A stretch of 64,000 nt of DNA from Takakia lepidozioides (lineage: Eukaryota; Plantae; Bryophyta): contig CM060732.1 of the NCBI GenBank assembly GCA_030704615.1, positions 59,396,001 through 59,460,000 on the forward strand. The letters run 5' to 3'. Below are positions 1,852 through 39,761 of this stretch, piece after piece (the stretch's first letter is position 1; each line of letters begins with the position of its first letter). The notes beneath the pieces were generated by a model. It saw only the letters and a program-made list of their open reading frames with translations. It was not told the origin of the DNA and searched no databases. A program made the translations under genes and the position numbers.

Positions 1852-1980
1852 CTCACCCCACCATCTGACCTTGAATTCATCACGTCAAGAGGGATATGCC
1901 AAACTCGCCCCGAACAGTCACATTAGCTGTTCTAGAACAAGCTGACATGCTTTCATTGTGCACCGTGACCTGAATGGATT

Positions 1981-17500: not shown

Positions 17501-18319
17501 TGTGTGGGGCTGTGCTAGAGTCAAGAGTGCACCACTTTCCACCCTTTGCTTTTTCTGCTTCTGTCGCTCCTCATCCTTCTCTTCCTCTCTTTCTCGCTCA
17601 TTCACTTTTCCACTCTCCCTTCTCATTTTCTCCCCCCCCAGTAGCTGTATTTCTTTGTCTGCTGCCCTTGCAATGTCTCTACCCTTCTCCTTATCTATCT
17701 TATCCTGTACCATGTCACCTTCACCTGCGCTTGCCAAGGTAGGCGTCCTCTCTTTCCCTCTAGCTCTTTCATAATCCCTAGACTCTTTGGCCTCTTCGTG
17801 CATCTCAAATGTTGCTGCTTCCTTCTCCTTCCCGACTCCGGTCTTGGGAACCCGTTCTGTCTCTATCACCTGATGCTCTACTTTCACTGCAATTTTCTCG
17901 AGACCTTGACCGAGCAGCTTGTCTGCAACCGCTACCTCAATTGGCATTGAGACCTCCTTACCATTACTGCCTGCCTGATGCATTCCTCTCACCTCTTCAG
18001 TCATCCCCGCCTCTCTCACATCTCCAAACCTTTCCTTTCCAGTCTCCTTGCTCTGGCCCTCAAGCTCTTGGCCTTGTCCTCTCCCCATTGCATCCTCCCC
18101 ATCAGGTTCAAGCTCCCCTTCCTCCATCTCACTGCTGACATCTGACTCCAAGATCGTCGCTTTGGGCCGGCTACTCTCCTTTCTCTGTTCCCTCTCCACT
18201 GCCTTCCCTTCCAACCCTGTTGTGTCTGAGGACTTGCCCACCATTTCTTTCTCTGTTCTCTCCCTCTTACTTCTAAATGGGTGGGTATCTGCCACTTCGT
18301 CCCTCCCATCCATTCCCAT
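14536..18319 (-). CDS. OBE3: OBERON3/4 (TITANIA)-like PHD finger and coiled-coil protein, at least 2 coding exons
   Basis: Long exon 18319-15961 has HHNPSCSLTENS (OBE3/4-type motif) and the OBERON PHD KCRNYSCQSQLPADDCDCKVC..GFCNSCMCVVCSKFDFDANTCRWIGCDFCLHWCHTDC. Donor is GTATGT at 15960. The last exon (about 15101-14536) has ELESIVRIKQAEAKMF..RADEARREAEGLQRI. An in-frame join needs the AG at 15103-15102, so the acceptor is uncertain. OBE3 versus OBE4 is not resolved. Confidence 0.9.
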
Positions 18320-20205
18320 ATGATATCACTTTAGATATGGAGCCTTTGTCGAGACGCCTGCCTTAAAAGGTACATTGGCGGTGATCAAACTGCTTGACCC
18401 CCTTGTCTCTGTACGCACGACCATCCCTGCCAGATGGTCTGGAATCCTTTGAATGACCGTGATCTTGAATTGCTATGGTGAGTGTTGCGGAACGGGCAGT
18501 GCAGGCTACTTACTGGCCGCGAGTGTAATTCAAGAAGGTGGACCTTGTGGAGTTTGACTTGTGGCGGTGTCGGGTTTTGTAGTATAGGGTTTGACTTGTG
18601 GAATTAGTGTGTTCGTCGGGACTCGGGAGCAGAGCAATTGGTATGCGATCCTAGGGCATCATAGCGCTTATGTAGCTTCGAGGAATTGTATGCTGCTAGC
18701 GACCATAATTAGAGCCGGGTATTATGAATCCTGTGATACCGTTGCTGGCTTGATGGCGGCCTTGATGACTGCTGTTTGTGGCTTGTGAGTGTCAGAGTGG
18801 TTTTCTCCACCGCCAGAGGCATACTGCGGAATTGGGTGTTCCTCCACCTCTACCCCGTCTCTATCACCCTGGGTCTTGGCCACACTGGTCTTCACTTCAT
18901 CCCTTTTCTTCTGAGGAGACAAGGCGTGATTTTCTTGCTATGGAAATGGAGATGAAACATATAACGTAGACGACAACAATGGCTACCATTCCAAGCTTGT
19001 GGACTGTCTATCTTCTTCACGTATGTTGGTCTTTACATTTTGTTCTGGAAATACGAGCGAGGCAGATGCAAGATGAGCATGCCAGCTCAGTTCTTCTTTT
19101 CTGTTATAGCTCTGACTATGGCACACATGCACGAGACTATGTGGTGAAACAATGGGATGTGCCGGTAACAAGAGTTGATGAACTGGAGAGGAACTATCTC
19201 GTGAAATGACAGAGAACATTGCCTTCACGGATGCAACAAGAGGTCCGGAAACAGTGAAATGCCTTCTTGGATGCGAGCAAAAGTCTATGATAGAGAGATG
19301 TGAAGCTATAAAATCTGGCGGGCAGCATTGCGCGCTTGGAGTGGTCGGGAGTGTGTGCGATGCTTCCACATTCAGTGTCTACTTCTCTCCACCCCTCTGC
19401 TTTCCACTCTCCCAGGTAAGCTCCTCCGCAGCCTGCCCATGTTCTAGTTAGCTACTGCTGTCTAGATGAGCTGTTTTCTAAACTCAGCAAATGAGCTGCT
19501 AGAAATGTTCTCTTTCTTTGTATCTTGTTTCTATCTTTCGGCCTTTATCTCTATCAGTGTTACTCTGCTTGCAATCAGGGTCCTTTTGGCTTTTCAATTT
19601 TGCAAAAATTAGACTGCATCCGTGAGGAAGTTCGGCGGGAATTGAAGTGTAGGTGTTGTCTACAAGAACTGATAAATTTATGATACTCTCTCCTATTCTA
19701 TGCCACAGAAGCACCATGCATTTGCTTGAGACTTTTTGATACTTTGTGACTATGATAAAGACCAGTGTTGCATTGTCTCAACAAGAAGAAAACCAAAATG
19801 AAATACTAAAGCTACAAGGTGGTGATGTTCGCTCAAAGGACTGCTGAGACTGAGATCATGTGCCCATATAATGATACTGATTGTAGTACTAGAAGCTTTG
19901 TCTCTCTCTCTTAGGGGGCTAATGACGTCCCGTCCCTAGAACTCTTATCAGAATGTGAGACTAATTACTGAATGATGTCCAATTACACTAGTTCAATAGG
20001 ACTTGATGCCTGAACAAATCAACCACAAAAAAGAGGCGGTTGATAGCTCTGGTCTGTCAAAGATAATCACTGAGAATCTCCTGTCCAATGGTACTATCCT
20101 CTTATTAATTGCTGTTTTCTGCTGCAGCATACCCTGCACCAATGCAAGATGAATCTTGAGACACAACTCGTTAACATCATCTATCTGGCAATTTATTGCA
20201 GCTCT

Positions 20206-22678
20206 ATGGCTTTTGAGACGAGCTTGGCCATTTGCCAGAATTTCCAAACCCTGCAACGGAAATGTATGCCATTTCAACCTCCCATACGCTTTAAGCTATG
20301 TTCGATTGATAATGTGGTTACAACACAGATGAGAGGTGGATACAAGCTGAGGTCCTTTGTTATTGAAACGCTTGCAGCAACAGGCTTTTTTCTTGGAGAA
20401 GTTGGCCGAAAAGACTCGGGTTGTAGATCTTTGCGCAAATCAATACTTACTATAGCCAAAGCAAGTAGCTTAAGCTTGGAAGGTCATAGTTTGTGCGATG
20501 ATGGAGATCAACTGAAGTCTAGTGATGAAGCAATTAGTGGTGAAAATGCACTGGATCTGCAAGGAGTGTGTGCGGTTTGTGAAAGACTGGAGAAATCCCA
20601 GGGTTCTAATAACGAAGCAATTAGAGGCCATAGTTGCCAAGACATGGTATCACCCAGTAACACAAGACATTTACCAAATCTTTCTTGGCGAGAAGTTGTG
20701 GAGAACATGTGCCGGACATCAGACTCAGAGGGGCAGCGGAGTTCTTTGCAAAAATCAGGGCAGCAGGGATGGCTGAAAAGAGTTAAAGTTGGTCGACGGG
20801 CAATGTTGTTGAAAGCCGGGGCAACCTATGGGCTAGGTAGAAGTTGCCAGTGTTGTAGAGAGGCCATAGCCTCAGAGTGGGGCTATGGAGGTCCAAGTGG
20901 ACCAAAAGAATGGGGGGGGATGTGTGCGACTGGACCTCGGCAATCACCGGTTGATGTTCCAGTCAGTAATTTACAAGAAGGGGAGGCTCTTGGGGAGCTT
21001 CTGTTTGAGTATAAAGCTAGCTCTCCTTCTTTCCAAAACACTGGCCATGGCACCATGCAGGTAGGCATGCTTTTTGAACTCTTTGTCTGCTTCTGTGTTA
21101 GTGCCCTCAGGAAGCAGCTCCAAAGTCAGTATGCTCTCATTCTCTTCATAAACACAGGTGGAACAGAGACCAGTCCTCAAACTGTGCACTCTTTTTGATC
21201 TCTCATTCCTTACTTGCTGAGCATCTGTATTTTGGCAGGTTAACTATCCACTGGGACAGTATATGCTGCATGTTGGAGGAAGGGAGCTGCAACTGCTACA
21301 GTTCCATTTCCATACTCCTTCAGAGCATGCATTTGATGGGTTTCGCTACCCCATGGAGGCCCACTTGGTACACCGTATGCCCCTTCCCCATCCTGGTTTG
21401 ATTGATCTCATATTGTCTAGGAAATTTTACTTGGTAAATGTGTGGCAATATAATTCGGAAGTTTTGAGATATTCTCAAGTTAGAGAGACACCTCTACAGA
21501 TAGATGAGGTGGAAGGGGTAGTACGGGATGGGGAAGAGCAGGTTGGGGCCAATACACTGCCGTACCTGCCATTTAGTTGTGAACTCACTTTAAAACAAAG
21601 TTTTATTTTGGCCTCCCAAAAGCTCTTCACACAGCGTCAACATGATCCAAGAATGCACCCGAGAAAAAAAACCAAACCAAGGAAGAGCAGGAAGGTGTTG
21701 GGGTTCTATGACCTGAAGGACTGATAGAAGAATTTATGTGCATGCTGCAGGCGATGTGACCAAGAATACGCTCGCAGTTGTTGGGTAAGTGTCACCCACG
21801 TATCTCCGCTTTCCGCTCTTCTTTTCTCCCTATTGAGTCCCAAACGGGTGCCGCGACTATTTTCAAAGGATTTAATATACACAATCTCCTGCAACGTACA
21901 TTCAGTGGGTAGACATAATTATGACTTCTAAATGGAAAAGAGAGCATCCCTGTGGTTTATGTATTTGGGTTTGTTTAGATTACTTAAGTTATGATGATTT
22001 CAGATGAAAGTCGATACCAAGAAAACCCTCCGTTGACTGAAGAAGTCATCTGCAAGAAAGTCCCAAGTCCCTTATATCCTCTGGATTGAAACGAGACGAG
22101 GTTGGTGCACAATGCAGGGTAATGCTGGACACCAGTGGCGATGCGTTCCCAAATAAGTGCCTCGCAGCAGCTCTCCGATACTCACCCGTAGAACACAGCA
22201 AAGTTTTGTAAGTTCCATCTCTCTCTCTCATTTCCCAGCTGTACATGCCTTGTTGTGTATCTGCATTCATAGTCACCCTTGGCTAAAGGAGATAGGTAAT
22301 TAACAGCTACAAGTGGAGGACTTCATGCAAAGTGGGAAGTTGATTTTATTAATTCGAATTCATACTAATTCAGCCACTCTTGGACAGAATTCTCCCTTGC
22401 GGTTCCATTTGCTGTGCAAGATTCAACTCCTTGATCTTGACATTTAATGTGCACATCTGAAACAGGCAGTACACCTTGTAACATGTGTACTCAAATTGAT
22501 TGGAAGCAGATGAACAACAACAATTCCAAAGAAGTAATTGCATTAAATGGGCTAAGAAGGTATGGAAGGACAGTCCACTTGGAACAGCAGTTGAACTCAT
22601 GAAATGTCACTTATCTGCAGGACTGTGCCATATGTGCAATTGTCTGCTGCTTACCTTCTCCCTCCCGCAAATAAGAAG
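20206..22678 (+). CDS. Alpha carbonic anhydrase, CAH3-like thylakoid-lumen type; coding exons 1-5
   Basis: Exons 20206-21060, 21239-21374, 21751-21784, 22118-22207 and 22621-22678 join in frame across GT-AG introns. They give GRRAMLL..EAIA/SEWGYGGPSGPKEWGGMCATGPRQSPVD, NTGHGTMQVNYP, QFHFHTPSEH and MEAHLVH (three Zn histidines), LAVVGVML and LLPP. A likely 5' UTR intron spans 19416-20201. Confidence 0.9.
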
Positions 22679-22874
22679 GTAATTTGTCACGCGGTCTTGG
22701 TTAGAAGCTGAGGTGGCTTCCTCGGATGCATTAACTGTTAAAGCTATTCACAGCCGTACATCTTGTCACTGTTTGATCCACATCTTTAAGATTTTCTCTT
22801 CACAGGAGCAATCCTTATTCATAATTCCCCCTATTTCAATCAACCCAATCTTCACATTTTACTTTGAAAGTCTC

Positions 22875-23165
22875 AAGGCTGAGCCAAAAGTTCAGGCCCC
22901 TTTTGGGCCCTGTTGTTGGGCAAACAACACACAGCAGATTGATGCTTGTGTAAAGGGCTTTCTAGAGGATATCTGGAAAACTCAGATCAATTGTCTGTTC
23001 TGTCATGCTACCGGTGTCAGCCCTTGACAAAGGTAGTTTCTGTCCCTATGTGTTCCGCTCAAACTGAGCGCGGGGTCAATGGCCACAAGGCTACGGCAAA
23101 AACAAACGTCTTATGAGGGGTCAATGGCCACAAGGCTACGGCAAACAACGTCTTATGAGTACATC
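22875..23165 (+). mobile_element. LINE 3' end copy in intron 5 of the carbonic anhydrase
   Basis: Reverse complement of about 1100-1350 (QIDACVKGFLEDIWK; GGCCACAAGGCTACGGCAAA), with an internal ~40-bp tandem duplication. Confidence 0.75.
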
Positions 23166-23214
23166 TTCACATGTTCTTCAGGGCTGGCTTCATGACAGAC
23201 ATTGAATTAAAAAA

Positions 23215-23405
23215 TGCATAGCATTGTGGCCAGCAGAACAATGAGAGAAACATAGCATTGTGGCCAGCAGAACAATGAGAGAAAATGTACTCATGCACAT
23301 TCCCTGTGAACGTTGGTTTGCCATAGAGAGAATGTAGTCATAGGACGTTGTTTGCCGTTGCTTTGTGGCCATAGAACCCGCGCCCAGTTTGGACAGAAAT
23401 AGGTA
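23215..23405 (-). mobile_element. LINE 3' end copy in opposite orientation, fused to the truncated last carbonic anhydrase exon
   Basis: Matches about 1040-1190 in the same orientation and contains a ~30-bp tandem duplication (CATAGCATTGTGGCCAGCAGAACAATGAGAGAAA). Confidence 0.7.
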
Positions 23406-23435
23406 CTCATCGCCCACATACTTCATTGAATTCCA

Positions 23436-23859
23436 CTACTTGGGATGTTCATCGCCCACATACTTCATGAATTCCACTACTTGGGATGTTGGCACTTTCA
23501 GTGGCATTTCTGGAAAACAACACATTCCCTCCAAATAAGAAGAAAGCTTCAGATCTAGAAAACCCAATATGCCATGCAAAACCTCTCCCTCAAGACATAA
23601 TGGAGAACACGCGACAACATTATATCTCTTGCTCAAGGTAGATGTCTGCAATGTCCAATGGACCCCCATTGCGCTCCCCTTGAGTGGTCCCAAGAGAGTT
23701 GGAATCCTCTTGGACTCATACTTGCTGTTATTATTATGGTTCCATGAGGTACATCTTAAGTGGTGCATTCTGCTCACCGAGGAGAAACCAGTCAACTCCT
23801 TCAGAGCAAGGAGGCGTCGTGAGAGAGCCCACATAATGCATGTAGCCTCTACTGCCATT
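23436..23859 (-). pseudogene. Inverted 3' exons (6 and a truncated 7) of the CAH3-like carbonic anhydrase
   Basis: Exon 23859-23778 (TGCAG acceptor, GTGAGC donor) encodes NGSRGYMHYVGSLTTPPCSEGVDWFLL. The exon starting at 23509 (TTCCAG acceptor) encodes EMPLKVPTSQVVEFMKYVGDE, followed by a ~40-bp duplication and LINE sequence. Confidence 0.88.
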
Positions 23860-23947
23860 CTGCATGCAAAAAAATCTCCCGTCACATTAAGTGCCTGGAC
23901 GTTGGGCTTTGTGCTATTTCGTGCCTTTATTATGCTGAAACCCCACT

Positions 23948-24240
23948 GCGGGGTGACACCTGACAAGGTCACCTTCATCTGTTCCCAATGCATGCTCCAG
24001 CCTGGGAGTTGTGGATAAAGGACAAGAGGTTCATGTGGGTGCATCAACAAAACTGGAATAGTGCCAGATATTATGGTGGAGGCAGCCCCTGTTGACAGGT
24101 ATGCTAAATGTGATAGTGTCAAGGAGGCATGTCCAGTTTTCGACAGGTTTTCGACAACATGGCTCAACGAGATGTTGTGTCATGGAATGCGACGATTGCA
24201 GGATATACTCTGCATGGGTTTGCTATGGAGGCTTTCGAGA
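23948..24240 (+). pseudogene. PLS-class PPR gene fragment
   Basis: GVTPDKVTFIC, IVPDIMVEAAPVDRYAKCDSVKEACPVFDR and WNATIAGYTLHG, with frameshifts. Confidence 0.8.
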
Positions 24241-25179
24241 AATGTGCGTGCTAGAAATGTGTGACCTGACTATGGAGTCGGTTTAACAATCAAGGTCAGG
24301 CAAAAATGTGGACTCCCAAAGTAGGCCAGCCCTTTTGCTAGTTGCTTTCTCTGTAGGTCCTTCTATTCTTGCTAAAACCGGGTCACAACATTTGGAGGGT
24401 AGAACTCTACAGCAGCATTGAACTCTCCAATAACCTGACTAACAAGTTTTTTATTTGCCCGAAGGGAATTTCAAAGGATGTTGGATAATCGATAGTTGTT
24501 TTTTGAATGATTATGTCTGTTATCTTCTTGGCAGACCAGCATTTCTGAGGCGCCATTGCAGCTGTTGGCAAGTAGGAACTATGGAGGTGTGAGCGACTGC
24601 CTCCTATTGACGAAATGCTAAGAAGCAACTGCGAAGGGTTTTAAACCAGCTTTGGCCCCCAAAAGCACAAAACCCAAGTTGCCAGACAATTTTAGCAAGC
24701 TGCTAGTGCGACCGCGCTTGAGGGTGGTGAAGCAGGTTGGGTTCTTTTGCTTTTGAAGATTTTGAACCGCAAACATTAATTTACTTCTCCGTACACTCCA
24801 CCTTTTTTCTGAAGTCCTATTCTCCAATTGCAGACACAGGGGGAGCTGCAGATCAGCATTTAGAAACCTTATTGATGTGCTAAGGAATGTAGAAGCCTGC
24901 CACAAAGGCCTTGTGAACTTGTTCAGCCATGCCACGACAGCTAGCCTGCAAGCCATTGTTATGAAGGGCATTTAATCTTCTCATGACATCCACCAGGGAG
25001 AATCCCTGGTCAGGTAAGCTCTTTTTGTGAAGGTGTGAACGATACGTTTGATTATGCCGTGTTTCTGTTCTCTGCAATCTCTAGCACTGCCTATTGATTT
25101 CAGGGGGTTGTTACTTGGAAAGCCAGTCTCTAAGCCACTTGGAGCGCAAAACACTCCTATCAGATAAGCCATTAGGCAC

Positions 25180-25295
25180 ACAGGAGGGAAACATCACCAG
25201 CAGACCACCCCGTCACGAACAATCCACATACTGCACAGGGCAGCGGGTTCCACCAGGGCGACACATTGTGCACTTAACCAGCTGAGCTACCAGCC
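25180..25295 (-). mobile_element. tRNA-derived SINE-like head
   Basis: Minus strand reads GGCTGGTAGCTCAGCTGGTTAAG (A box) with a degenerate B box and no full cloverleaf. Confidence 0.4.
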
Positions 25296-25554
25296 GATGT
25301 GCGAGTCATTAATATAACTAGGGCTTCGCGTTGCTCCGCATAACTAGCGACGAATTCTGAGAACAACGTTCAATTTTCACAAATTTAGGTGGGTTTTCCC
25401 ATTTCATTGTTTGATGTAGCTACCTCTATCTATGCCCTAGAAGTGAGTCAAGGTGAACTCTTCTGTATTTTCCCCTTCGTTAAGCATTTGTTTCATCATG
25501 ACCGAAATCCGACTGTTTATCCGTTGCTCATCATTTTTTTTTTAATATTTTTAA

Positions 25555-25790
25555 AAAAGGAAACACCTTGGGAGCGACAGCTCACAAATCAGGCCCCTTT
25601 ATAGTGAGAGGAGAAAATAACCACTTTCACAGTAACCCTACCATGAGGCGTAGGAAGTAGAGAAATGGGGGCACCGCCCAATGGAAGGGGTAGAGGAGTA
25701 TACCACACCCTCAAAGTAGCATGGTTTGCCCCATAATCATCTGGGGTGGCACTGAGTTTACTAACCAACTTAGGTACTGATTGTTGGCCA
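25555..25790 (-). mobile_element. SINE family A copy
   Basis: Homologous to 44205-44440 (GCTCACAA.TCAGGCCCCTT..GTGAGAGGAGAAAATAACC.CTTTCA.AGTAACC). Confidence 0.65.
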
Positions 25791-25944
25791 TCCTTTAGTT
25801 TCTCAACATTTAGTTTATCTTGATAAAAATACCTCAATTCAACAGCGACATGGCTCCTTTCTAACCTATCTGACCATTTGTTTTTATGGGCAATTGGTGT
25901 AGATTTCAAATAGTTTGGATTCTTAATTTAATGGGCATGTAGCT

Positions 25945-26610
25945 CACTACAAGAGGTGAGCGTTTTTAGGACTACGGCTTTGGCGGAGTCATAAAAACTG
26001 CACTTGACTACAGAGCGCTGAAATGCATTGCAGTCATAGTTTTATGACTTTGTAGTAATGGATATCACTACATGACTCCGGAAAGTTAGGGAGCATTGGT
26101 CAAACATTGTTGACCATGATGACAGGGATGGTTTATATGGACTAGTGTGTGATATGTTTGGACTACACGTGGACGACGTTTCATGGAATCTTATGACTCC
26201 ATGACTGAAGATGGTTTCACAGCTCTATTTATATGACTACATCACTACACGTGTTATTTTGAAGGCATATATAATGCAAATAAGGTTGCCCATTAGGTTT
26301 AAAAAAATTAAAAAATTGCTAATAAGGTTGCCCATTAGGGATTAGGGTAATCGTGAACAGAAAGGAGGGCTGGGACTTGGCCTTTTTTTTGTCTCCTACG
26401 CCACATCACATAGCCGAGGGATGGAACGCGATGATAGTAGGATATGCAGGGGCGTGGGATGGAGGCGTTGAGCAAATGATGCACGAAGGAGAAGAAGAGG
26501 AGGAGGAGGAGACGAGGAGACGAGGAGAAGCGAGCTCGCTGTTCTTGGAAGAGTCAGCTTGGTCTTAGCAGGCGTGTTTCAATCTCTGACTACTCAGCTA
26601 CGCCGTAGTG
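25945..26610. mobile_element. Probable non-autonomous CACTA element
   Basis: Starts CACTACAAGA and has many ATGACT/GACTAC/AGTCAT subterminal motifs. Possible right end GTAGTG at 26605-26610. Flanks are GCT and GTT (one mismatch). Confidence 0.45.
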
Positions 26611-27655
26611 GTTCGTCATTTGCTCATACATCTTGAAAGTCTCACCGCCACAACCATGTTGACCATATCATGTGATCATTGTACTCCAAGAGACCACATC
26701 ATGTGCATCCTTTGTACTCCCCCATTTGGCATACATGTCAGTAAGGCCAGTCTCCATATCTGCTACAATTCCAGTTTTGATGATGAGCATGAACCTCTTT
26801 GCCCTGTTCCAGGACCCCTAGGCTAGCACACACATTGAGCATGCAAATGAAAGTGACCTTGTCGGGTGTCACCCGCTCCTCTATCATTTGTTCGTATTTC
26901 TTGAAAGCATCCCTATCAAACCCATGCTGAGCATATCCTGCAATCAATGCGCACCATGAGAAAACAACCGTTGAGCCATATTGTTGAACACTAGTCATGC
27001 ATATTTCATGCTTCTGCATTTGGCATACATGTCAACAAGGGATGTCTCGAGTATGATATGTCTCGAGTATGATATCTTGCGAGTATGATATCTCGCACGA
27101 TTCCAGATTTGACAAATGTCAAACACTGCCTCTTTGCCCTTTAGGTAAAACAAAGATACACCCCAAGTTGGGATTGTTGGGAACACTGCTGATTTTAGTA
27201 AGACCAAATATGAGGTAATTATATGCAGTTAACTTGAGACTGCAAGCCCATGAGAAGTAAACATGTCGGACCTCACAACCTCAAGGGAAGCCTTCCCAAG
27301 TCTAAGTTTGTTTAAGCTAGGAGTGATGCCGTATCAGCAGAACTGATAGCATTACCAACAAGGGAAAAAGTTGAACTGAACAGAACAACCAGCACACATT
27401 AACTTACCAGGGTGCATGAAATACCTGCCAGTCAAATTGGCACCCACATTCCAGTAGATGGCCAATACGTGTTCCTTGGCCAAGATGCCCCCAGTCTTGC
27501 CAATTCCAGCCCAACTCGTACGCTAGCACACAGATTGAGAATGCAAGTAAATGTCCCCCTGTTAGGCATCACCCCTTCATGTCTCATTTGCTCATAAATT
27601 GTGAAACCCTCCTCAGCATCTCCATGCTTGGCATATGCTGCCATCATCATAGTTC
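26611..27655 (-). pseudogene. PLS-class PPR pseudogene, fragmented
   Basis: MMAAYAKHGDAEEGFTIYEQMRHEGVMPNRGTFTCILNLCAS; ETSLVDMYAKCRS; SWCALIAGYAQHGFDRDAFKKYEQMIEERVTPDKVTFICMLNVCASLGVLEQGKEVHAH. Broken by frameshifts and insertions. Confidence 0.85.
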
Positions 27656-27797
27656 ATGTAAACATATCTCGTTCAGACATCTTAAATTGGAGAACAAACC
27701 CTTACAATCAAAAAATTACCTGCTATATTCTTGGCTTGAAGCTTGGTGGTGTAAATGTGAATTAGAACCATCAACAGACTGTGCTTGATCCTGTATC

Positions 27798-30080
27798 ATG
27801 GCCACTGGTACTAGTTTCATCCAACTAGGGTTTGACCAGCCCTCAAACATGGCCTTAACAACGATGATTGAAGCACAAGTCGACCTCATGGTTGACGGTC
27901 ACGCACAACAAGCCAATGCCAACATGAGTCATGGCAGCCCACCAGCAATTTCTGCCTATGATGCTTCTCAAATGCATGAAAATGCACGGGTGGTCTTGGT
28001 GAATGCGACCATTGGATGGGTGGAAGGGGTGAGTTCTCCACCACAGTTTTGTGTGCCGAATTTGGGTTTGAATAATGAGTTCCAAAAGTCTGTAGAACAT
28101 GTTGCAGCATTATCATGTGGTCCAGCCCTAACTCAATGGAGGGGTGCAGGTGTTCGGAGGGATCAACAACAAGGAGAGGATAATAAAATGCAAGATGAAG
28201 CAGGGGAGGACAGAGTGTATGGAGTACTTCACTAAATCTGAGTACGACAGACTTGTTGTGGAAGCTCATATTGAATGTCGACAAGATGAGTACTTGGGTT
28301 TTGAGAGGCGTCCATTCTTCTACAAGTACTGTGATGCTAATTTCAAGAACAAGAATAGTCTGAGCTACCATCAATTAAGACAATCATGCCCCATGCACAA
28401 AGGGCCTCCCTTGAAGATGTACCCAACATTTTCCCAAGGAGAAAAGGAGGAGTTGAAAATGATTTGCGAGAAGTTAGGTATGAAGCTTCCAAATCAGGAA
28501 AAAATGAAGAGAGAGCCTACAAAAGCGGTGGAGCCATTTCACAGTACCATCAAGAAGCCCTCTGTGGGTAATCAAACACCAGGAGGAAAGAAATCCAATG
28601 CACCTCAGTCCAAGGTATCATTGGCACACGGGACGCTCAAGCTCCCATTTCCTCCTTTATTGCAGGACATACCGAAAAATGGTGGGCAGAACACATGCAC
28701 AATTCAGAACAGTGCACTCTGCGAAATCCCAATGGGGATGAATGTGCAGATAGACCAATCACAGCCAATGATGCTTGAGCGTCCACCTCCCCCTAATTCT
28801 TACAAACAGAAGCCAGTGACTCGGGAAGACATACACTCAAGAGCTCTAGAAACAGCAAATACGTTCACTTTGGGGGGAGAGCTCGATGCTCTTGGTGACC
28901 CACCAAACATGGTTGCCCCTACAAGCTTGTACATTTTATTGTCACAAACCGCAGATATCATGGACCCAAGTATCATCAAGGATCCTGTTGAATGCCTCAA
29001 ACTCTTTGAGGGACATGGAGCGCAATGACAAGCTGGATCCTGGCATACGGAATGCATATGGGACATGATACATGGATCCTGCTGATGTAAGAACCGGACC
29101 TCTTATCTAAGTCCATTAGTCTATTTTGTTGCAAGTGCTTAGAACCATGTTCATTTGTTGGGAGCTTTGTTGACGTAGAAGCAAGGATAGAATGCTAATG
29201 CAACTTTGCCGTTTTTGCAGGGTCCGAGAGGAGAACCAGACCTTGGACTTGTTTAGGCCACTTTGGACAACTTCAAATGCCTATAAAATGGGGAACCTAA
29301 GGTAGAGGCACGAACAATTGAGTTTTACAGGCTTCAGGAGTACCTTATGTTCCTGCAAAACAATGAGTTGTACCAAATTCGAAAAGAGGCTGTAGAACAT
29401 AAACTAAATAGAAGGAGATAAGAGTTTGTTGCAGCGGAGCTTGAGAAATTTGACAATTGTCCGATGTTGGGAGGAGTTGAAGAAGTGGGGTTGGTCCTCT
29501 TTGCATGCAATGCTGAAGGCAAATCCATCGCCTACTGGGCCACAACAGCCTTGGAACCACACAAAGGAAGAGCTTGACATGATTGTCACTACAGCTATGG
29601 AGCAGGTTATCTAGAGGAACTATTGATGTGGAGAAGACATGCCCCCAAATAATGCGAGCCTTGAAATTATTTGTGAAGTTTTCTATGGGGAAGAACCATC
29701 CTCTTGCATGTCCTTTTAGGGGTCTTAGTCGATCTCGCATATTGTCTTACGCTCGAGATGAGAGATTAATTGTGCGCCTATCCATTGCTATTGAAGATTT
29801 GTTGGAGGAGGGCTTTATCTAGTTTCCTCATATGTATACCTCTTGCTCAAGAAAATGGAGAAGAAGCAAGATCTGACCTCGTCGACTTGTTGGGTTACAA
29901 TTTGGCTCAGCCCAACAAGTGGTTGTTGAGAAAGTAATGTCCTTCACTGCTGCCATGGGTCACCGTGCGCTTGGGGACATGGGCCTCCTTGGGTTTCGTG
30001 AAGAGCTCAATGTTTTGTGGTGTGATGTGGGGGATTTGGATGCACAACGTCAAGCATTAACGAACAAGCCTTGGCGGTAA
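27798..30080 (+). pseudogene. Degraded multi-exon gene of unknown function, probably transposon cargo, with a C2H2-like motif
   Basis: Overlapping ORFs 27798-28235 and 28144-29028 suggest a frameshift. YCDANFKNKNSLSYH resembles a zinc finger. There is an acceptor at 29220 and further ORF pieces at 29340-30080. Confidence 0.4.
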
Positions 30081-30292
30081 GGTGGCGTGTGTGCAGGTGT
30101 TGGGGATTAAGGTGTCGTCAATGACCTTATCCGTTTTTTGCAGCAGCAAACCAGATACAGGTAATTCTTGAGGGGTGGCCTTAGAGGAAAAGGCCCGGAC
30201 AGGAGCGAGTTGATGTTGCGGCAGCAAGAAGATCGGGGGATCCCAGCAAAATAACGCGGGCAGCGAGCATATGTGCAGATGGCACCCCTCTC

Positions 30293-31381
30293 GTGGGAAG
30301 AGTTCCCCATCTGGAAGGCGAAGAGAGATTCGGGTCTTGCAGACGGAAATTGGATACCCCTCCCGGATCGGATGCAGACTCCCATAGGGCGGACAGGGTC
30401 AACTTCTCGACGCCACGTGTTCCCTTGGATCAGAGATGGAATTGCGGAACATCCACAGGTGAGGGCCATTCTGCCCCAGACCGGACCCCTACATCAAGCA
30501 TTGTCACTGCAATGGTTAAAGACCAGAACATGGTGCGGCATGTCATAGAGTCCATGTGCTTGGACGAGGTTTGGCATATAGAACGCACAAGTGCTGGATC
30601 GCGTGTGAAATGCGCGGCGATCAGGGCCACCAATCATGAAAAATGTACATCATTAATATCCAGAGGGAAAGAACGCACTGCAGCTCCTACATTCACTAGT
30701 TTGTTTCTTCCTTACGGCCAAGGAGAGGCAAAGAACCACAAGTTTTGGTTTTGCGCTGACGATTGCGGGAGATGTTTGCGTGGGACAGTGAGGCCCTCCG
30801 TGGTGAGGAAGCCTACTCCACCAACCGTGTGGCCTGTGAAGATGGGCACAAGTCTCACTCACCAAGAGATCGCAATGCTCGAAGAGGCGGGTTTCTCCCT
30901 AGCCAGACATTCCATTACACGTGAAGGTGCTTCAAGTACAAGCGGTTCACGGGTACCTCCGCCTGACGCTCTCTTGTGGTCAACCAGACGGAATGGGAAG
31001 CTGGTTCGACGATTCCCTCCAACCGCAGAACACTATGGCAAAATCGAGTCCGCGAGAATGCTTCACGCTCGTGTTGCGGGAACAATGGAAGTGCCTGATC
31101 CAGGGTATGGTCGGGTCTTCACCATGATCTCATCCGCATCTGCGCTACAGGACAAGACGTACGACATCACTGTTTCTAATTTTCCAAATTGTACCTGTCC
31201 TGATTTTGTTGGTATGCTTTCAAGTAGTTTGGGAAAGAGAGGGAAGTTCATACCGTGCAAACACCTTTACTTCATCTTCTTGAGAAGGATGGTTTGTGAT
31301 CCAAAGCGGGACTTTTTCATTCACCAAGCCACTATAAACAAAGAAGTAAATACTGTACTAAACTATGTTGCAGAGCAATAA
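30293..31381 (+). CDS. SWIM zinc-finger protein (ZSWIM2/MEKK1-like SWIM), likely transposon-associated
   Basis: 362-aa ORF with YDITVSNFPNCTCPDF..PCKHLYFIFLR (CxCx(n)CxH) and an upstream Cys cluster (KCAAIR..EKCT..FWFCADDCGRC). Confidence 0.7.
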   Translation: MGRVPHLEGEERFGSCRRKLDTPPGSDADSHRADRVNFSTPRVPLDQRWNCGTSTGEGHSAPDRTPTSSIVTAMVKDQNMVRHVIESMCLDEVWHIERTSAGSRVKCAAIRATNHEKCTSLISRGKERTAAPTFTSLFLPYGQGEAKNHKFWFCADDCGRCLRGTVRPSVVRKPTPPTVWPVKMGTSLTHQEIAMLEEAGFSLARHSITREGASSTSGSRVPPPDALLWSTRRNGKLVRRFPPTAEHYGKIESARMLHARVAGTMEVPDPGYGRVFTMISSASALQDKTYDITVSNFPNCTCPDFVGMLSSSLGKRGKFIPCKHLYFIFLRRMVCDPKRDFFIHQATINKEVNTVLNYVAEQ

Positions 31382-31935
31382 TAAGGTGAGGAAGTATTGC
31401 ACTAAAGTCTATTGTAGAGCAATAGGAGAACCCTCGAGCCCGTGACAAAATCAATATGTGTACATAGTAGTACTTATTAAAAGCTTGACTCTTTGAGTTC
31501 CCAGAACTATGAATGTGTATATATGTTCTGCCCCCAAGTAAACTTATTATGTCATGCCAGTAGATGTGATTATCATGGGCTTTGTTATCTATATACTTAG
31601 CAGGAAGAAGAAGCATGACTCTATTGCATTGCAACAAATAATGTTGTAGAGCATCAGCAAAGAAGTAAGTACTGCACAAACTATGTTGCAGAGCAATAAC
31701 AAATAAGCAAAATACTGCATTACAGTCTATTGTAGAGCAATAGGATAGCCCCCAGAGACCGTGACAAAATCAATATGTGTACATAATAGTACTTATTAAA
31801 AGCCTGACTCTTTGAATTCCCAACACTATGTATTTATAATCTGCCCCCAAGTAAACCTATTATCCAATGCCTGTACATGTGATTATCATGGGCTTTGTTA
31901 TCAATATACTTAACATGAAGAAGAAGCATGACTAT
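31340..31935. repeat. ~320-bp diverged tandem duplication
   Basis: AGAAGTAA.TACTG..AAACTATGTTGCAGAGCAATAA..CGTGACAAAATCAATATGTGTACATA..GAAGAAGAAGCATGACT occurs at about 31340 and about 31660. Confidence 0.85.
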
Positions 31936-32234
31936 ATTGGCAACACCATCACAATATAGCAACACATATAAAATATTCCACATAATCGCACACACAACAT
32001 GAGTACTGTAGCTATATACAATATGAACACACACCAATAATACAATAACATGTAAGAAGTAAACTTGTACTTGACAATACTTTGAGCTTGATATTGTAGC
32101 ATGTGAAGGAAAATACAAATTTCAAAGCAGAACGAAAAACACATGTTCTGGTGTGAATATAACTCCAACAATATGGAGCAACGTCCATGTGCATGCAATA
32201 CAAAAGCTGGCATTGCTAAGGACATATGTTTAGC

Positions 32235-35200
32235 CTATATGAGTATGCGCTTACGAACCCATTCCTGCCGATTGGTGGTCTTGGGTGCAATCCCCTCAAG
32301 AATGCCTCTATGACGTTTCAGTCGCTTGTCACCATCCTCTGCCACTGGGAAAAGTGCTGGTGCTATTGGGTGTTCTACATTTATAATGCCTCTAGCTATC
32401 ATGTCTTGTTGTTTGCCTCTAAGAGCTTTCAAGTCTAACAAGACATGGTCATGCAGTACATCATTTCCATATGCCACTTGCAGTATTTGCTCGAAAACTT
32501 TATGTATGGCCTTCATCTTGTCACACGGTTTTGGGAAATTATCAGGACCTGGAGGACTTTGTTCTATGCTCCGAGGTGTTGCCTGCGAGCCTGCAGTCGG
32601 ATAAACAACATTGTCTCCAACAATTCCCTCATTTTTCATTGGCGTGAGCATGCCTTGATTTGCCATGAGATTCAAACCTCCATAGTCTGTACCTCTTAGT
32701 GCTTGCCAAACGAATTAGTCCTCCACATCTGGGTGCAAGAGCTTGAATACCTTCACAATGTGTTTGCAGATGTATTCCTGTGAGGCAGCAGGACAGTCAC
32801 ATTGGGCCCATTCACTTCTAGGTACGTGCACAGTCCAGACCGGAGGTGGGTTATTTACGGAAGCCACATACATAACATCCTGGTCATCTGCATGAAGCAC
32901 AACATGGCCATCTGGTATGCTTCTTGCACGCAGAACTGCACTACAAACAATACCCTCTTGGCGTTTGTTGCGCACAAAACCAAATGCTTTGCATTGTACC
33001 TGATACCAATAATGTGTGACTACATCACCTACCAACTGATAAATCAACCAATCAACTCGTCGTCCTTCGAACCTTTCTTTGGAAGAGTTGAGAATGGACT
33101 TCAAGTTCCCATGATAAGATTCAATCGCCGCATTTGTGTCTTGACCAGCGTGGGGAATGTTCCTGTTTCCAATGATCCACATGTGACATTTATGGACCCA
33201 ATGTTTATTCATGTACTTCATGAATCGAGCAGCGTCAGGGTACTTGGTAGTCATCTTGGCTAGACGACTCTTGCCCCACTGCACCGCCTTATCGCCAATA
33301 GGTCCAGACTTATCATACATGATATCTCCAAGGTCATGCAAAATTTGTGCTCAAAGTTCTGGAATTACTATTTCTTGATAGCATTTTCTGCCCATGCTTT
33401 ACGCACGTGCCACAGACAAAGGAAAATAGCTGAATTCCCCCAAACCTTGCTACAAAAATTGCAATATAAGTTGTCAATAATTATGGGGTTCAGATTGTGG
33501 TATTGCCTAACACATTTTACACAGCCTTCAAACCATACATGAATGAAAAATGTAGTACAAGACTTTTGCTCTATATATGTGCGCACATATGTTCTGACCT
33601 TATTGTGTTGATTTTAGCTTGAGCATTGTTAACTATAAATGCATTTGGATGCCATGCTGGATCATGCTGGAGCAACCTTGCATTCAATGCTTACATCCAG
33701 GGCTCAAGATCATCCTGGTGACTCCTTCCAGTGATTACATACGCAATTGGAATGTGATTCTGCCACTCATCAGAAACCATAAGGCTGTACAACGGATACT
33801 GCAAAACAAAGGACAATATATGTCAATAACTCAATGATTGCCTATATGTTGCTCATCGCAAATCTGCTTCCACTCAATAAAAAAAATAAAATTGTAAAAC
33901 ATAACCGGATATACACGAACCTTATTCTCATTTTTACCAAATGTAGCATCACAGGACACTGCCCTCAAATGTCCAAACTTGAGCATCATTTCCCTCTGCC
34001 AATTAGTTTGGATACCTATAGTGAAAGGAAGTTCTATAGGAGATGGGACATTCAAATCAAAAGAGAATGTTCTTAATAGAAGAAGACGGACTCTTGATTT
34101 TCCTGCATCCACATACGCACACTCATAGGGTCCTTTGGATGTTTTTGCCACAGCTCTTCAGCTCGTTTGTTGGCACTACAGGAAAAAAAAAAAGGGGGGG
34201 GGGGGGGTTTCGACGTCGCGGCCACGCCGCAGCATCGTAAAACAGCCCTTTTCGGGGAGGGGGGAAGAACCAAATTTGCGACGCCCGTGCGTCGCAAGCC
34301 CGTCGCAAGCCCGTCGCAAGGGCGTCACCAAAAAAACGTCGCAAATTTGCGACCAATATGGGTCGCAAATATGCGAAACCGCGATTAGCGACGTTCGGAC
34401 GTCGGAAAAAGAAAAAGAAAAAAGAAAAAACTACTCTGCAATGCAGAATTAGCACCGACCGGGGGTCGCAAAGTGCGACGCCCGGACGTCACAATTTAAG
34501 GGGTTACATTTGAATTTAGGTGGGAAAATTTGAAATTGAAATTTGAATTTCAAAAACTTGTTGACCATTGATTCCGGCGTTGACCATTGACTCCGGTTCT
34601 GTCTAATGGCGATATGTTCATTGTTCTACATATATCATGCAATGCATACTTGAACCTAAGACCTCCATGTTATAACATTTCTAAAACACTACAAACTAAC
34701 CAACACACCTACGCTACATCTATGTATCACAAAAGCAATCTATATATATATATATATATATATAAATAAAATTTTATTTTTCTTCAAGTTCCTTCCAGTT
34801 CCTTCTAAGGGGGTCTCTCTTGTGACGCCGGGGAGTTGCAACCTCCACAACCTTAGTGCCCAGCCCCAGCCCCAGTATTGTCGCCGTTGTTGCACCCCCC
34901 CCCCCCCCCACCGCCAGGCGCCCCTAACGACGTTCTTGTGATGACCTAAGCTGACCACAACACCATTGCGACCCCCTGTGGCGACGCCATTGCAACCCCC
35001 TGGCATCGCAACGTTGGGCGTCCCAGCGCGGGGCGCCCCCAGCAATGCTTTTGTAAAATTGAGGGCCACAAAGCCCAGAAAAAAACAAAAAAAACAAACT
35101 CCCGCTGTAGTGATGCTGTTGCGACGCCCTAGCATTGCAGAGGCACTGGGGTGCCCTTAATGACGCTTTTGCGACGCCTAGGCGTCGCAACGTCCAAAAT

Positions 35201-36460
35201 AAAAAATAAAAATAAAAATAAAAATTGGATTTCCGACGCTGGGGCGTCGCAAGAAAAAAAATCCGTCGCAGCGAGGGCCTTTTTCCCTCCTTCATGCCAC
35301 CTTACGACGGCTGGCCGTTGTAATGGTGTCACAGCGGGGGATTGCGATGCCGGGGCATCGCAAAAAAGCGCCGCGGGCTCAGTGCCGTGCGGGGCGTGGG
35401 GGCGCGGCTGGCGTCGCAAAATCCCCCCATTTGTTGTAGTGTGGGAGGTTGCGAACGTCACTAGGGAGTACAAAGGTATCCCTATCCACTGGAGCATTCA
35501 ACAAGGCCATCTCCTTAATGCGGGCTTTGTGCTGCGCCAGGACTTGGCTGGTGATAATCCCATTTGAAGTAGAGACATGATGTATTGATTCATGTCATCA
35601 GACAAGTGGACCCCGAGAGAAACACGGAATTGAGCAAATTATGAACCCCCATGACATACTTCTCCATCAATGTTTGCATGCTCCATGTTGTGATATAAGA
35701 TTTCATACAAAATGTTGTCAAGATACAATTGTTTTATACGAAATTGACTTTGACAGCATCATTTAACAGACATGGCTGACATTTTTTTGGTGATCCTCTT
35801 TTTTTTCTCTTGAATCTTTCCATGGTATACTGTACTGGACTGCTCCTGCAGTAGTGCAAGCAGCTGAACTGAATCATATGACAGAATGAACACATAGCCA
35901 TAATATACCAACCTCATTTCTAAAAGTTGAACAGATTGTGTGTGGCAAAATGACCAAAATATGATTATTTGTACAACAGTAAAATATAAATTTGTGTTCA
36001 ACCACAATCTGAGTACATGTGTCTTGGTTTGCAGGACGACCTCTTTCTGCTCTGCTTTTACTTATTTTTTTGATTTTTTCTTCCCTTTAAGTTGAACTTT
36101 CTGTTTTCGCTTCTTTTGTGTAGATATGAGTAGTGTTCTCACATCCTGAACCACCATTTAACTATAGTCTTCAGGGCCATAACAACAACGATATATGTTC
36201 ACAAATTCCAGATTTATAGCATATGCAATATATGTTTGAAAAACAAAGTTTGAGTTCCAAAAATAGTTTTGATAGTGCACTTGATAGCTCACCTCACAAG
36301 CAAAGTGCTACTGTTTGTCGTGGGTGGGTGATAGATCCAGGAGAATTTCTCTTCATGACCTCTTTAATGAAACTAGAAGGAAATTGATGATTGTTCTGCT
36401 CCCCTTCAATAAAATCAGACACACGATCTCATGGTATAATGGCGGTACAAGTGTCTTTGT
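32235..36460 (-). pseudogene. MULE-type DDE transposase with SWIM finger (AT4G13970/AT1G60560-like), intron-containing, disrupted
   Basis: Ordered minus-strand motifs: AIIP*DRVSDFIEGE, YRCCYGPEDY, EHANIDGEVCHG, LLQMGLSP, DRDTFVLPSDVRNL, KDPMSVRMWMQENQESVFFY, PFTIGIQTNWQREMMLKFGHLRAVSCDATFG, FLCLWHVRKAW, GQDTNAAIESYHGNLK, RRVDWLIYQL and CDCPAASQEYICKH. Confidence 0.8.
34174..35441. mobile_element. Non-autonomous CACTA element (1268 bp) inserted in the transposase
   Basis: CACTACA..TGTAGTG termini, perfect 3-bp TSD TGG (34171-34173 and 35442-35444), numerous GCGACGC/GCGTCGC subterminal repeats, internal (TA)n. Confidence 0.95.
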
Positions 36461-36561
36461 ATTGTCCATGTCATACAGTCACATGTGGAGTTCATTGTCG
36501 GTCCACCTTGCTGAAGATACCATCTGGAGGGCTCTGCATCTTAGCCCACATGGAAGCAATA

Positions 36562-36900
36562 CACTACAGGAAAAGGGGGGCATTTGCGACGCCCGAGCCA
36601 CGCCGCAGTGTCGGGAAAACGCCCTTTTCAGGCAGGCGCAGAATTTGCGACGCCTGGCCGTCGTATAGGCGTTGCCAAAATGACGTCGCAAAAATGCAAC
36701 GTATGGGGGTCGCGAGCCCCCGCCCCAACTCCCGCGACTGCCGGACGTCACTTTTCAGGCCGTCCACGCCGATGGCAGGGGCCTCCGTCGAGCGACATCT
36801 CGCCGTCGCGGCCCTCCAGCCGACGGCGTTGGTGGGGGCGCCGGCACGGCGTCGCATCCCTTTTTTTTTCTAACCTGCCCGGGAGTCCCATCATAAAACC
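36562..36900. mobile_element. Truncated CACTA end of the same family
   Basis: CACTACAGGAAAAGGGGGGCATTTGCGACGCC followed by GCGACG repeats; no matching right end seen. Confidence 0.8.
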
Positions 36901-39761
36901 CAAAAACACGTGGCGTAAGGGCTACCAGTTGGCGGATTGTATGTCTTCGAGAGTATTTCTGACCAATGCTAACAGGGAATGAGGCCCTCTGTCTCTCTTC
37001 TTCTCCTGCTTGTAGTCAGCATCAATCCTCTACCTAGTGGTCAGCTATCCTATTGTCATGGAAAGCGGAGGATATACGTATGGTGGAAAGTTAGTGAATT
37101 CTGTAATTTTGTCACATGGGGTTTGCAACAGAGACCAGTGCAGCCATTGGGATCGCATGAGATTTTCAAAGGGCCATAATAGATTCTTCATTTTGGTACT
37201 GCATTCCCCACATCATCCTCTGTAGCTTGCTCTCCTTTGGTTTGGGTAAAGCATCTTGGCATGCTAGTAAATGCAAAAGACGGGGAAAAAATTGGTTAAT
37301 AATAGTCACTTGCAAAGTTAGGCAACCGTTGTTTCTCTGCAAAGGGTTTTTTGGTTGCTTTCCCAATGCCCCACTTTGAATCTGTGACAAAATCTGTGAT
37401 TGTACCTGTTCACTTGGTCTCTCAAATTGACCTATGAGATATAATCATCGTGGACAGTCTTCAAGTCTATTCTGTAAGAAATGTAATGAAGGATCTTTTA
37501 TTCGACACTGATTCAGCAGTTGCAACGTGCTAACAGCCTTGTTACTTGGTTTATTGTATAGTTGAGTGAGTACATATCTCACAAGCGATAGGAGCTCCGC
37601 TTCTTTTCAGAATCAGGGTAAGATGGCTCCAAAGTTTTTGTAATAAATAAATCAATGATTTCTCAAAGAGGGACAGGAGGGCTTACAACTTAACAACATA
37701 ACCAACTAGAACAACCAAATTGTGTACTATGTTGTTCATTTTTGTTTTTGTTTTTTTAAAAAAAAAATTGTCTTGCAAGGGTTTTTTATATCTTATTTTT
37801 TATAGAACAAGAGCAATGGAATATGCAACTGCAATCCGTGCACAGTGGAAGGTTTCAATGTTTTTATCTTGTGAAGAGCTTCTACGGTAGCCTCCTTTTT
37901 CTGGGTTGCTGTTCACGCAAGTCTATTGTTTTATCTGCACTTCACATGTATGTACGCAGTGTTGGGTGAGATTGACATGCCACCATAACTTCTTGAAATG
38001 GAATTAGTGCTTGGTAGACAAATGAGTCAAAAGGCTTGAATCGAGTACTTGTCTCTCACACTACACCATTTATTGAGAGAATTACTGTCTTTCGTGTGCC
38101 CGGTTGGTGTATAATTTGTTATCTCTTTCAGAAAAAATCCATGTCAGTATATTTCATAGCAGGTTTGTTTTTTTGGATATGCATACTTTCGTGTATTTTT
38201 ATGTTAATTTGTAAGGTCAATGTATCAATTTGCTATATGTTTTAGGTGTTTTGGAATATGTATTCATATTATCTTGATGTTTCTGTACTTTTCATGGTGT
38301 TGGTATGCTCAACACTTTTAAGGACTATCTTGTAACTCTAGGGGCATATTATCGCTAGTATTTTTAGGCGATTATATGTCACCGAACCGTCAATTTTATG
38401 TTCATTTGCTAAAGCAAAATTTGTTTACTTGAGGAAGAGGACCAAGCCGGAAGATAATAGGAATAATGTAAGAACTTAATGCACACGTGCAACCTTTCAT
38501 GGGATGGAACGCCGGTTTTTGGCATGTCAAATTTTCCCCACCCTCTCTTGAGAGTGACATGGAACTGAAGAGTGTAACCCACTGGGTTAAACGACGAAAC
38601 ATCATTTGGTGTAACCCACACTTGTCTCAAAATTTGACTAAGTCTTAATTTGGCTAAGTATAAAATGGACTAACCAGAGTTACATGAGCTAACCAGAGCT
38701 ACCCCCACAGCATGAAATTGAGGTAAGAGGGGGATGGGAGGATTTTACAGGGGCCCCGTTGGAGGAGCCCAGGTTGCCGAAATCCGGCGAAAGTACCGTC
38801 AGATTCGCACAGTGTCCATTAAGTTCGTACATTATTCCTATTGTCTTCTATATATGTATATATGTATAGCAAAATATTTAGTTTAATATTTTACAAACAA
38901 ATAGATGAATAAATATAATTATTATAGTCTTCAAGTAACGTACTTTCTATTTCAGTGGATGCTTTCTAGTGGATTTTAAAAAAAGTATTTTTATTCCATT
39001 ACAATTATGGATCTTGTAGTTGTTGGGGATTACAAGTAGATGACAAGTTATGGAATTTTTTAAGAAATAAATCAGCTATCTATTGGAAAATGACAATTGA
39101 TTGTCAGAGCTGCTAAAGAATGTTTAAAGGTGACTTATGATACCTTTTATGAGCAAGATGCACCTTGCATTACATCTACCATGGCCTATATTAGCTACAT
39201 TTTTACAACTAGCCAAAAAATCTTTCATCAATTGTATCTTGCTGAAAATAACAAATACTTTGTGTTACAAAAGCTTTGCAATCGCATGGAGTGGTGAAGC
39301 TTATTGGTTATCTATCCCATGTTGCATTGGTTTAGAGCCTAAATGCATATATTTTGCCAACTTTGAGTGAAAACTTAAATTGATTGCATACAATAACATT
39401 AGAAAGAGTTGCTAGCATCATGATTCAAGACAAGATTATAAGGAAGCTAAGGGTATCCATGGACGAAGTTCAGTGATCTTCGTGTTAGGTCACGATTCCC
39501 AGATCCCAACAGACGCCACAGTTAGGCACTCATCTTGGCAAATTGACATAAGCATCTTTAATCTTACAACACCAATGTACATTTTCAATTCTTTTGTCTA
39601 TCATTTCTATATTTCTTGTATCTCCTATATTATCATTTATTTCATGATGTAAGTGTGATCTTACTAATTTCAATTCTTAAAATACTAACAAAATGACATG
39701 AATCTTTGAAAAAGACATAAGTGACGGATTGAAAAAGTGAATCACGAATTGGTCAAAAAAG

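What the first reader, a model, noticed from the sequence alone, without database searches (positions are those of the whole stretch)
20206..23940. One gene on two strands: the last exons of the carbonic anhydrase are inverted
Seen: exon 5 (plus strand) ends in phase 0 at ..AYLLPPANKK (22678). The GSLTTPPC exon was not found downstream on the plus strand. It is on the minus strand at 23859-23778, starts in phase 0, has intact splice sites and continues the protein (NGSRGYMHYVGSLTTPPCSEGVDWFLL). It splices in frame to a minus-strand exon 7. Exons 1-6 have no stops or frameshifts. Known: this motif holds the conserved active-site threonine of alpha-CAs. Inference: either a recent inversion that killed the gene, a local assembly inversion caused by the LINE repeats, or (least likely) trans-splicing of convergent transcripts.
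Basis: partly seen in the sequence, partly recalled or inferred. Interest (0 to 1): 0.88.

Follow-up and report, generated by a model that had tools for sequence, protein, structure and literature searches.

The report
Inversion breaks a moss carbonic anhydrase
In a moss genome, two middle exons of the gene for a chloroplast carbonic anhydrase (the counterpart of the algal CO2-supply enzyme CAH3) are flipped and one is cut short, which looks like an ordinary recent gene death by inversion, or an assembly error, rather than a gene spliced from two strands.

Summary
The strand switch is real in this assembly, but the picture was incomplete. The gene is a CAH3-type alpha carbonic anhydrase of a moss sister to Sphagnum (probably Takakia). 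Exons 1-5 are on plus and 6-7 on minus. Five orthologous loci are collinear with the same introns, so this is an inversion inside the gene, not inverted 'last exons'. Exon 7 is damaged: 41-bp duplication with a stop, last 18-21 nt and donor missing from the window, stump fused to a LINE-like 3' fragment without target-site duplication. The neighbouring LINE-like copy has its own 10-bp duplication, so the two copies do not bracket the inversion. Exons keep 46/47 invariant residues and low dN/dS, so the break is recent. Best reading: real inversion with repair scars that killed the gene (0.70). Assembly error stays open (0.22) because no reads could be examined. Trans-splicing could not give a whole enzyme (0.02). 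The scan noted the CAH3 identity before and, unchecked, many other inversion-split genes in this genome.

The parts
20206..21060 (+). CA exon 1 as modelled: long N-terminal extension, twin-arginine motif (GRRAMLL), start of the alpha-CA domain; true start codon uncertain
21239..21374 (+). exon 2, with the three zinc-binding histidines (FHFH..., AHLVH)
21751..21784 (+). exon 3
22118..22207 (+). exon 4
22621..22678 (+). exon 5, ends phase 0, GT donor intact
22848..23172 (+). LINE-like 3' tail copy A in intron 5, flanked by a 10-bp target-site duplication (22848-22857 and 23163-23172): ordinary insertion, not the breakpoint
23216..23402 (-). LINE-like 3' tail fragment B with a perfect 34-bp repeat, no target-site duplication; joins intron 5 to the exon 7 stump, i.e. 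the left inversion junction
23403..23448 (-). second copy of a 41-bp piece of exon 7 (one extra base) plus 4 nt; frameshift, stop ends at 23436
23449..23509 (-). exon 7 stump (about 61 of 83 nt), AG acceptor intact, no donor
23778..23859 (-). exon 6 with GSLTTPPC, both splice sites intact
23948..24270 (+). decayed PPR fragment; the right junction most likely lies near its start (inferred, not fixed)
24271..37131 (.). about 13 kb of PPR fragments and transposon pieces between the flipped exons and exon 8; the right junction could lie anywhere in it
37132..37179 (+). exon 8 (RPVQPLG...FKGP stop), AG acceptor and stop intact, phase 0

Best explanation
A real, evolutionarily recent intragenic inversion inactivated a CAH3-type thylakoid carbonic anhydrase gene. 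Shown: exon order E1-5(+), E7 stump(-), E6(-), E8(+) against a collinear ancestral gene; the left junction lies between intron 5 (about 23215) and a break inside exon 7, filled by a 41-bp local duplication and a 190-bp LINE-like 3' fragment; the end of exon 7 is gone. Inferred: two DNA breaks (intron 5, exon 7) were rejoined in flipped orientation with loss of sequence; the filler came either from error-prone end joining with templated insertions or from a LINE reverse-transcription event primed in intron 5 whose other end was joined to the break in exon 7. Inferred consequence: a plus-strand transcript cannot include the catalytic-threonine exon, so no active enzyme is made.
For: Five orthologous loci (L001, L003, L005, L006, L008) are collinear with the same intron positions. 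All eight exons match the same clade best, Sphagnum or Ceratodon first for all but the 10-residue exon 3. Exon 7's 3' end and donor are absent from all 64 kb, so flipping the segment back would not restore the gene. Copy A has a 10-bp TSD (chance about 0.0002), fragment B none. Three of the four exact two-copy tandem repeats of 25-60 nt period in the window cluster in 23072-23490. No N gaps; no repeat pair brackets the flipped exons except 71%-identical PPR fragments. dN/dS 0.09-0.13 in exons 6-7 and about 0.19 overall, 46 of 47 invariant residues kept: recent loss, roughly under 2-3.5% neutral divergence. Templated fillers at break junctions: PMC10923293; retrotransposon-bridged inversion junctions: 10.1101/2024.08.27.596794 (human tumours).
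Against: The right junction was not located. Apart from the junction damage the coding exons show no decay, which an intact gene with a local mis-assembly would also give. Unchecked scan notes list many inversion-split genes in this assembly, which fits a systematic error as well as biology.
Confidence: 0.7

Rival explanations
1. Assembly or library artefact (or a collapsed intact allele): the organism has a collinear, working gene, and the flip, the small duplications and the missing exon 7 end come from chimeric reads or faulty consensus.
For: No decay in coding exons or splice sites away from the junction; short tandem duplications cluster at the junction; a 48-nt inverted repeat nearby; many other inversion notes in this assembly, unchecked.
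Against: No N gaps; repeats are too short and diverged to mislead a long-read assembly (inference); a mis-oriented contig would keep the end of exon 7 at the other junction, and it is absent; fragment B differs from copy A in sequence and tail, so it is not an assembly echo of A.
Confidence: 0.22
2. The inversion is real, but the plus transcript splices exon 5 straight to exon 8 (both phase 0) and the in-frame shortened protein, which keeps the lumen signal and zinc histidines, has some role.
For: Exon 5 donor, exon 8 acceptor and stop are intact and in phase.
Against: The product would lack 55 residues including GSLTTPPC (gatekeeper threonine, and a cysteine that in such enzymes forms the disulfide; own knowledge) and core strands. 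It needs a 14-kb transposon-filled intron; nearer cryptic acceptors at 22805 and 23181 lead to early stops.
Confidence: 0.04
3. Trans-splicing of convergent transcripts rebuilds the enzyme, as at Drosophila mod(mdg4).
For: Exon 5 donor and exon 6 acceptor are intact and phase-matched.
Against: A whole mRNA would need two strand switches (5 to 6, 7 to 8); exon 7 has no donor and runs into a stop, and 6-7 conserved codons are physically missing. Intact sites are what a recent break predicts. No promoter evidence for a minus transcript.
Confidence: 0.02
4. Remains of two paralogous copies in opposite orientation, each partly deleted.
For: Ceratodon and Calypogeia have two homologues each.
Against: Every exon occurs exactly once and the sets are exactly complementary; the two intron 5 remnants sum to about 310 nt, in line with orthologous introns of 168-302 nt.
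Confidence: 0.02

Closest known systems
Chlamydomonas CAH3 and its bryophyte orthologues (10.1101/2024.06.26.600872)
   Same: Twin-arginine motif before the domain, three zinc histidines, GSLTTPPC; best solved-structure match of exons 1 and 7 is PDB 4xiw, which I know as CAH3. The paper reports orthologues in hornworts and some other bryophytes and loss in vascular plants.
   Different: Here the gene is split by an internal inversion and cannot encode the whole domain in cis.
Retrotransposon-bridged inversion junctions (L1-mediated rearrangements, 10.1101/2024.08.27.596794)
   Same: A 5'-truncated LINE-like 3' piece sits at the junction between two distant gene positions, without a shared target-site duplication.
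   Different: Those cases are somatic and human, with poly(A) tails and endonuclease motifs; here only one junction is located, the tail ends in short repeats, and capture as repair filler fits equally well.
Polymerase theta end joining with templated insertions (PMC10923293)
   Same: Deletion plus an insertion copied from the immediate flank (41-bp duplication) and a foreign filler.
   Different: Mechanism inferred from one junction; no pre-break allele available.
Trans-spliced mod(mdg4) of Drosophila (PMC4387717)
   Same: Coding exons of one protein on both strands.
   Different: There the arrangement yields complete proteins; here all orthologues are collinear and one exon is truncated.

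Membership tests
alpha carbonic anhydrase (PF00194) | Pfam domain match | tested here: met
   exons 1, 2 and 6 each hit PF00194, searched separately
alpha carbonic anhydrase (PF00194) | three zinc histidines and GSLTTPP threonine in sequence | tested here: met
   exon 2 and exon 6; 46/47 invariant positions kept
alpha carbonic anhydrase (PF00194) | complete domain encodable from one strand | tested here: not met
   exons 6-7 on minus, exon 7 truncated
CAH3 clade | closest to CAH3-type proteins rather than seed-plant or bacterial alpha-CAs | tested here: met
   exon-by-exon identity, PDB hits; exon 1 tree separates it from those outgroups with 90/89 support only
CAH3 clade | bipartite transit peptide with twin arginine | tested here: inconclusive
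   RR motif aligns with Volvox homologue; no targeting predictor run, start codon uncertain
CAH3 clade | thylakoid lumen location and activity | not testable with these tools
   needs experiment
trans-spliced two-strand gene | all exons complete with usable splice sites | tested here: not met
   exon 7 lacks 18-21 nt and donor, has a stop
trans-spliced two-strand gene | junction reads in RNA | not tested
trans-spliced two-strand gene | arrangement conserved in relatives | tested here: not met
   five collinear loci, all distant relatives
inversion by recombination between inverted repeats | homologous inverted repeats at both ends of the flipped segment | tested here: not met
   both LINE-like pieces lie left of the exons; no partner in 23860-37200
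LINE-bridged rearrangement | LINE 3' piece at the junction without matching TSD | tested here: met
LINE-bridged rearrangement | the repeat is a LINE | tested here: inconclusive
   the longer copy at 1050-1357 follows a CCHC knuckle ending an ORF; Atlas zf-RVT lead 0.91; Pfam blank
LINE-bridged rearrangement | reciprocal junction with target-site heteroduplication | tested here: inconclusive
   right junction not located

The most novel reading that the evidence does not exclude
A germline, LINE-bridged inversion recently knocked out the ancestral CAH3 gene in a relict moss, as one instance of a real genome-wide burden of kilobase-scale inversions that break genes in this lineage.
Probability: 0.2. 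Interest if true: 0.6.

Novelty: new member of a known kind. Interest (0 to 1): 0.3.

Why it matters
CAH3 is part of the CO2-concentrating chassis kept by hornworts and some bryophytes and lost in vascular plants; if real, this is such a loss caught soon after it happened, and a natural null in a plant without pyrenoids for asking what the lumen enzyme does there. If it is an artefact, it flags an error class that would corrupt gene annotation across this assembly. Neither outcome is a new kind of gene.

Tried and rejected
The message did not call the place human-like and said to go on with other tools, so exons were later searched by reference as proteins. The spliced model was joined only inside local scripts to check the frame; every search was exon by exon and the joined search and fold were left out. 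Exact look-up of ten window ORFs found no same-species record; three homologue searches returned nothing near-identical, so absence of an intact same-species copy is uninformative. A PLQLLASR stretch near 24560 first looked like the last exon; rejected once exon 8 was found. Intron alignments to L001 gave no signal for the right junction. My first guess of a fern was overturned. L003 exon 6 looked damaged but is an N gap. The dN/dS had exon 3 mis-framed; one search replaces it. The Takakia genome paper and the CAH3 structure paper were not held. The bacterial promoter scan is not informative for a moss.

Full report
Observation. Five plus-strand exons (20206-21060, 21239-21374, 21751-21784, 22118-22207, 22621-22678) have canonical splice sites and one open frame, ending in phase 0. 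The exon with GSLTTPPC is on minus at 23859-23778 with intact sites, followed by a minus exon starting at 23509. Exons 1, 2 and 6 each match Pfam PF00194. The motif occurs once in the window. There are no N gaps.

Identity and organism. Exon by exon, the best matches are Sphagnum and Ceratodon proteins, then liverwort, charophyte and chlorophyte ones. Exons 1 and 7 hit PDB 4xiw first, which from my own knowledge is Chlamydomonas CAH3; the structure paper was not held. A twin-arginine motif aligns with the Volvox homologue. CAH3 orthologues in hornworts and some other bryophytes, lost in vascular plants, are already published (10.1101/2024.06.26.600872). The neighbouring OBERON-like gene places the organism as a moss sister to Sphagnum, 97/97. 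About 5,080 windows of 64 kb, a chromosome over 56 Mb (offsets) and PPR debris fit Takakia lepidozioides (325 Mb, N50 83 Mb, PacBio plus Illumina plus Hi-C; PMC13120521). This is an inference, not an identification.

Orthologous loci from five sources (L001, L003, L005, L006, L008) carry the gene collinearly with the same intron positions; four include an eighth exon, and L003 ends before it. In the window, exon 8 is intact on plus at 37132-37179. The order is therefore 1-5 plus, 7 minus, 6 minus, 8 plus: an inversion with both ends inside the gene. Each exon occurs once, which argues against two paralogues.

Left junction. Orthologous exon 7 is 83 nt. Here it stops after about 61 nt, repeats its last 41 nt with one extra base (stop at 23436), and runs into a repeat at 23402. 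The missing 18-21 nt and donor are not found on either strand of the 64 kb by nucleotide, peptide or codon-pattern scans. The repeat (B, 23402-23216, minus) and a longer copy in intron 5 (A, plus) both match a sequence at 1050-1357 that follows a CCHC knuckle, probably a LINE 3' tail (Pfam blank). A is flanked by a 10-bp target-site duplication (chance about 0.0002) and is thus a plain insertion; B has none and links exon 7 to intron 5. Both lie on the same side of the flipped exons, so recombination between them cannot have made the inversion. Exact short tandem duplications cluster here: three of four such sites in the window.

Right junction. Not located. Intron 5 remnants on the two strands sum to about 310 nt if it lies near 23945, where a decayed PPR fragment begins; orthologous intron 5 is 168-302 nt. 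That would make the flip about 0.7 kb, but any point up to about 37100 is possible. The 13 kb before exon 8 hold PPR fragments and transposon pieces, whereas orthologous intron 7 is under 0.7 kb.

Age. dN/dS against Sphagnum and L001 is 0.19-0.20 for exons 1-5 and 0.09-0.13 for exons 6-7, close to the 0.17 and 0.10 between the two intact genes; 46 of 47 invariant residues are kept. With no stop, frameshift or splice loss away from the junction, a rough bound is under 2-3.5% neutral divergence since loss (assumed indel rates). These figures mostly record the long history under selection and cannot tell a recent break from an assembly error.

Mechanism. Shown: flipped exons, lost exon end, local duplication, foreign filler without TSD. 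Inferred: two breaks rejoined in inverted orientation by error-prone repair. A deletion with flank-templated insertion and filler is the signature of polymerase theta end joining in plants (PMC10923293); a truncated LINE bridging an inversion junction is described for human L1 (10.1101/2024.08.27.596794). One junction cannot separate the two. A plus transcript would use cryptic acceptors with early stops or skip in frame to exon 8, losing 55 residues including the catalytic threonine motif. Trans-splicing would need two strand switches and a donor that no longer exists, and would still end at a premature stop.

Limits. No same-species sequence was found. The joined spliced model was not searched or folded; searches were exon by exon. 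Unchecked notes from this scan list many inversion-split genes and elements in the same assembly; I treat them as leads only, and they raised my odds for a systematic artefact from about 0.15 to 0.22. Whether an intact paralogue exists elsewhere in the genome is untested; the scan's notes mention no other carbonic anhydrase, which is weak evidence.

Verdict. Real recent inversion that inactivated the gene 0.70; artefact or hidden intact allele 0.22; functional exon-skipped product 0.04; trans-splicing 0.02; two paralogues 0.02. New member of a known kind; interest 0.3.

Noticed in passing
window 15869-18319 (-): OBERON-like PHD finger gene head to head with the CA gene; used to place the organism next to Sphagnum.
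   Followed up: partly
window 1050-3100 (-): Degraded LINE-like ORF end with CCHC knuckle and a 3' tail of short tandem units, same family as the pieces in the CA gene.
   Followed up: partly
window 23948-24270 (+), 26616-27059 (-), 27330-27700 (-): Three decayed PPR fragments; the first two are about 71% identical in inverted orientation. They look older than the gene break.
   Followed up: partly
window 27800-31940 (+) and 32235-34170 (-): Two SWIM-finger transposase-like elements facing each other, the first ending in a 313-bp two-copy repeat.
   Followed up: no
window 34174, 35107, 35851, 36562: CACTA-like ends with GC-rich subterminal repeats just before exon 8.
   Followed up: no
window 25226-25300 (-): tRNA-like stretch, possibly a SINE head; not called by ARAGORN.
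   Followed up: no
window 49078-50671: AT-rich tandem array with a 114-bp unit and 228-235-bp higher-order periods.
   Followed up: no
window 3739-4032 (-): Fragment matching phosphatidylinositol transfer protein (PF02121).
   Followed up: no
window 23403-23411 and 23156-23164: The exon 7 break point reads ATGAGTAC, the same as the end of the LINE-like tail unit; possible microhomology at the junction, or chance.
   Followed up: partly
window 20190-20205; L008 10001-11290: An AG acceptor lies just before the modelled start codon, and the Sphagnum gene is annotated with two more 5' exons, so the CA gene may start further upstream.
   Followed up: no
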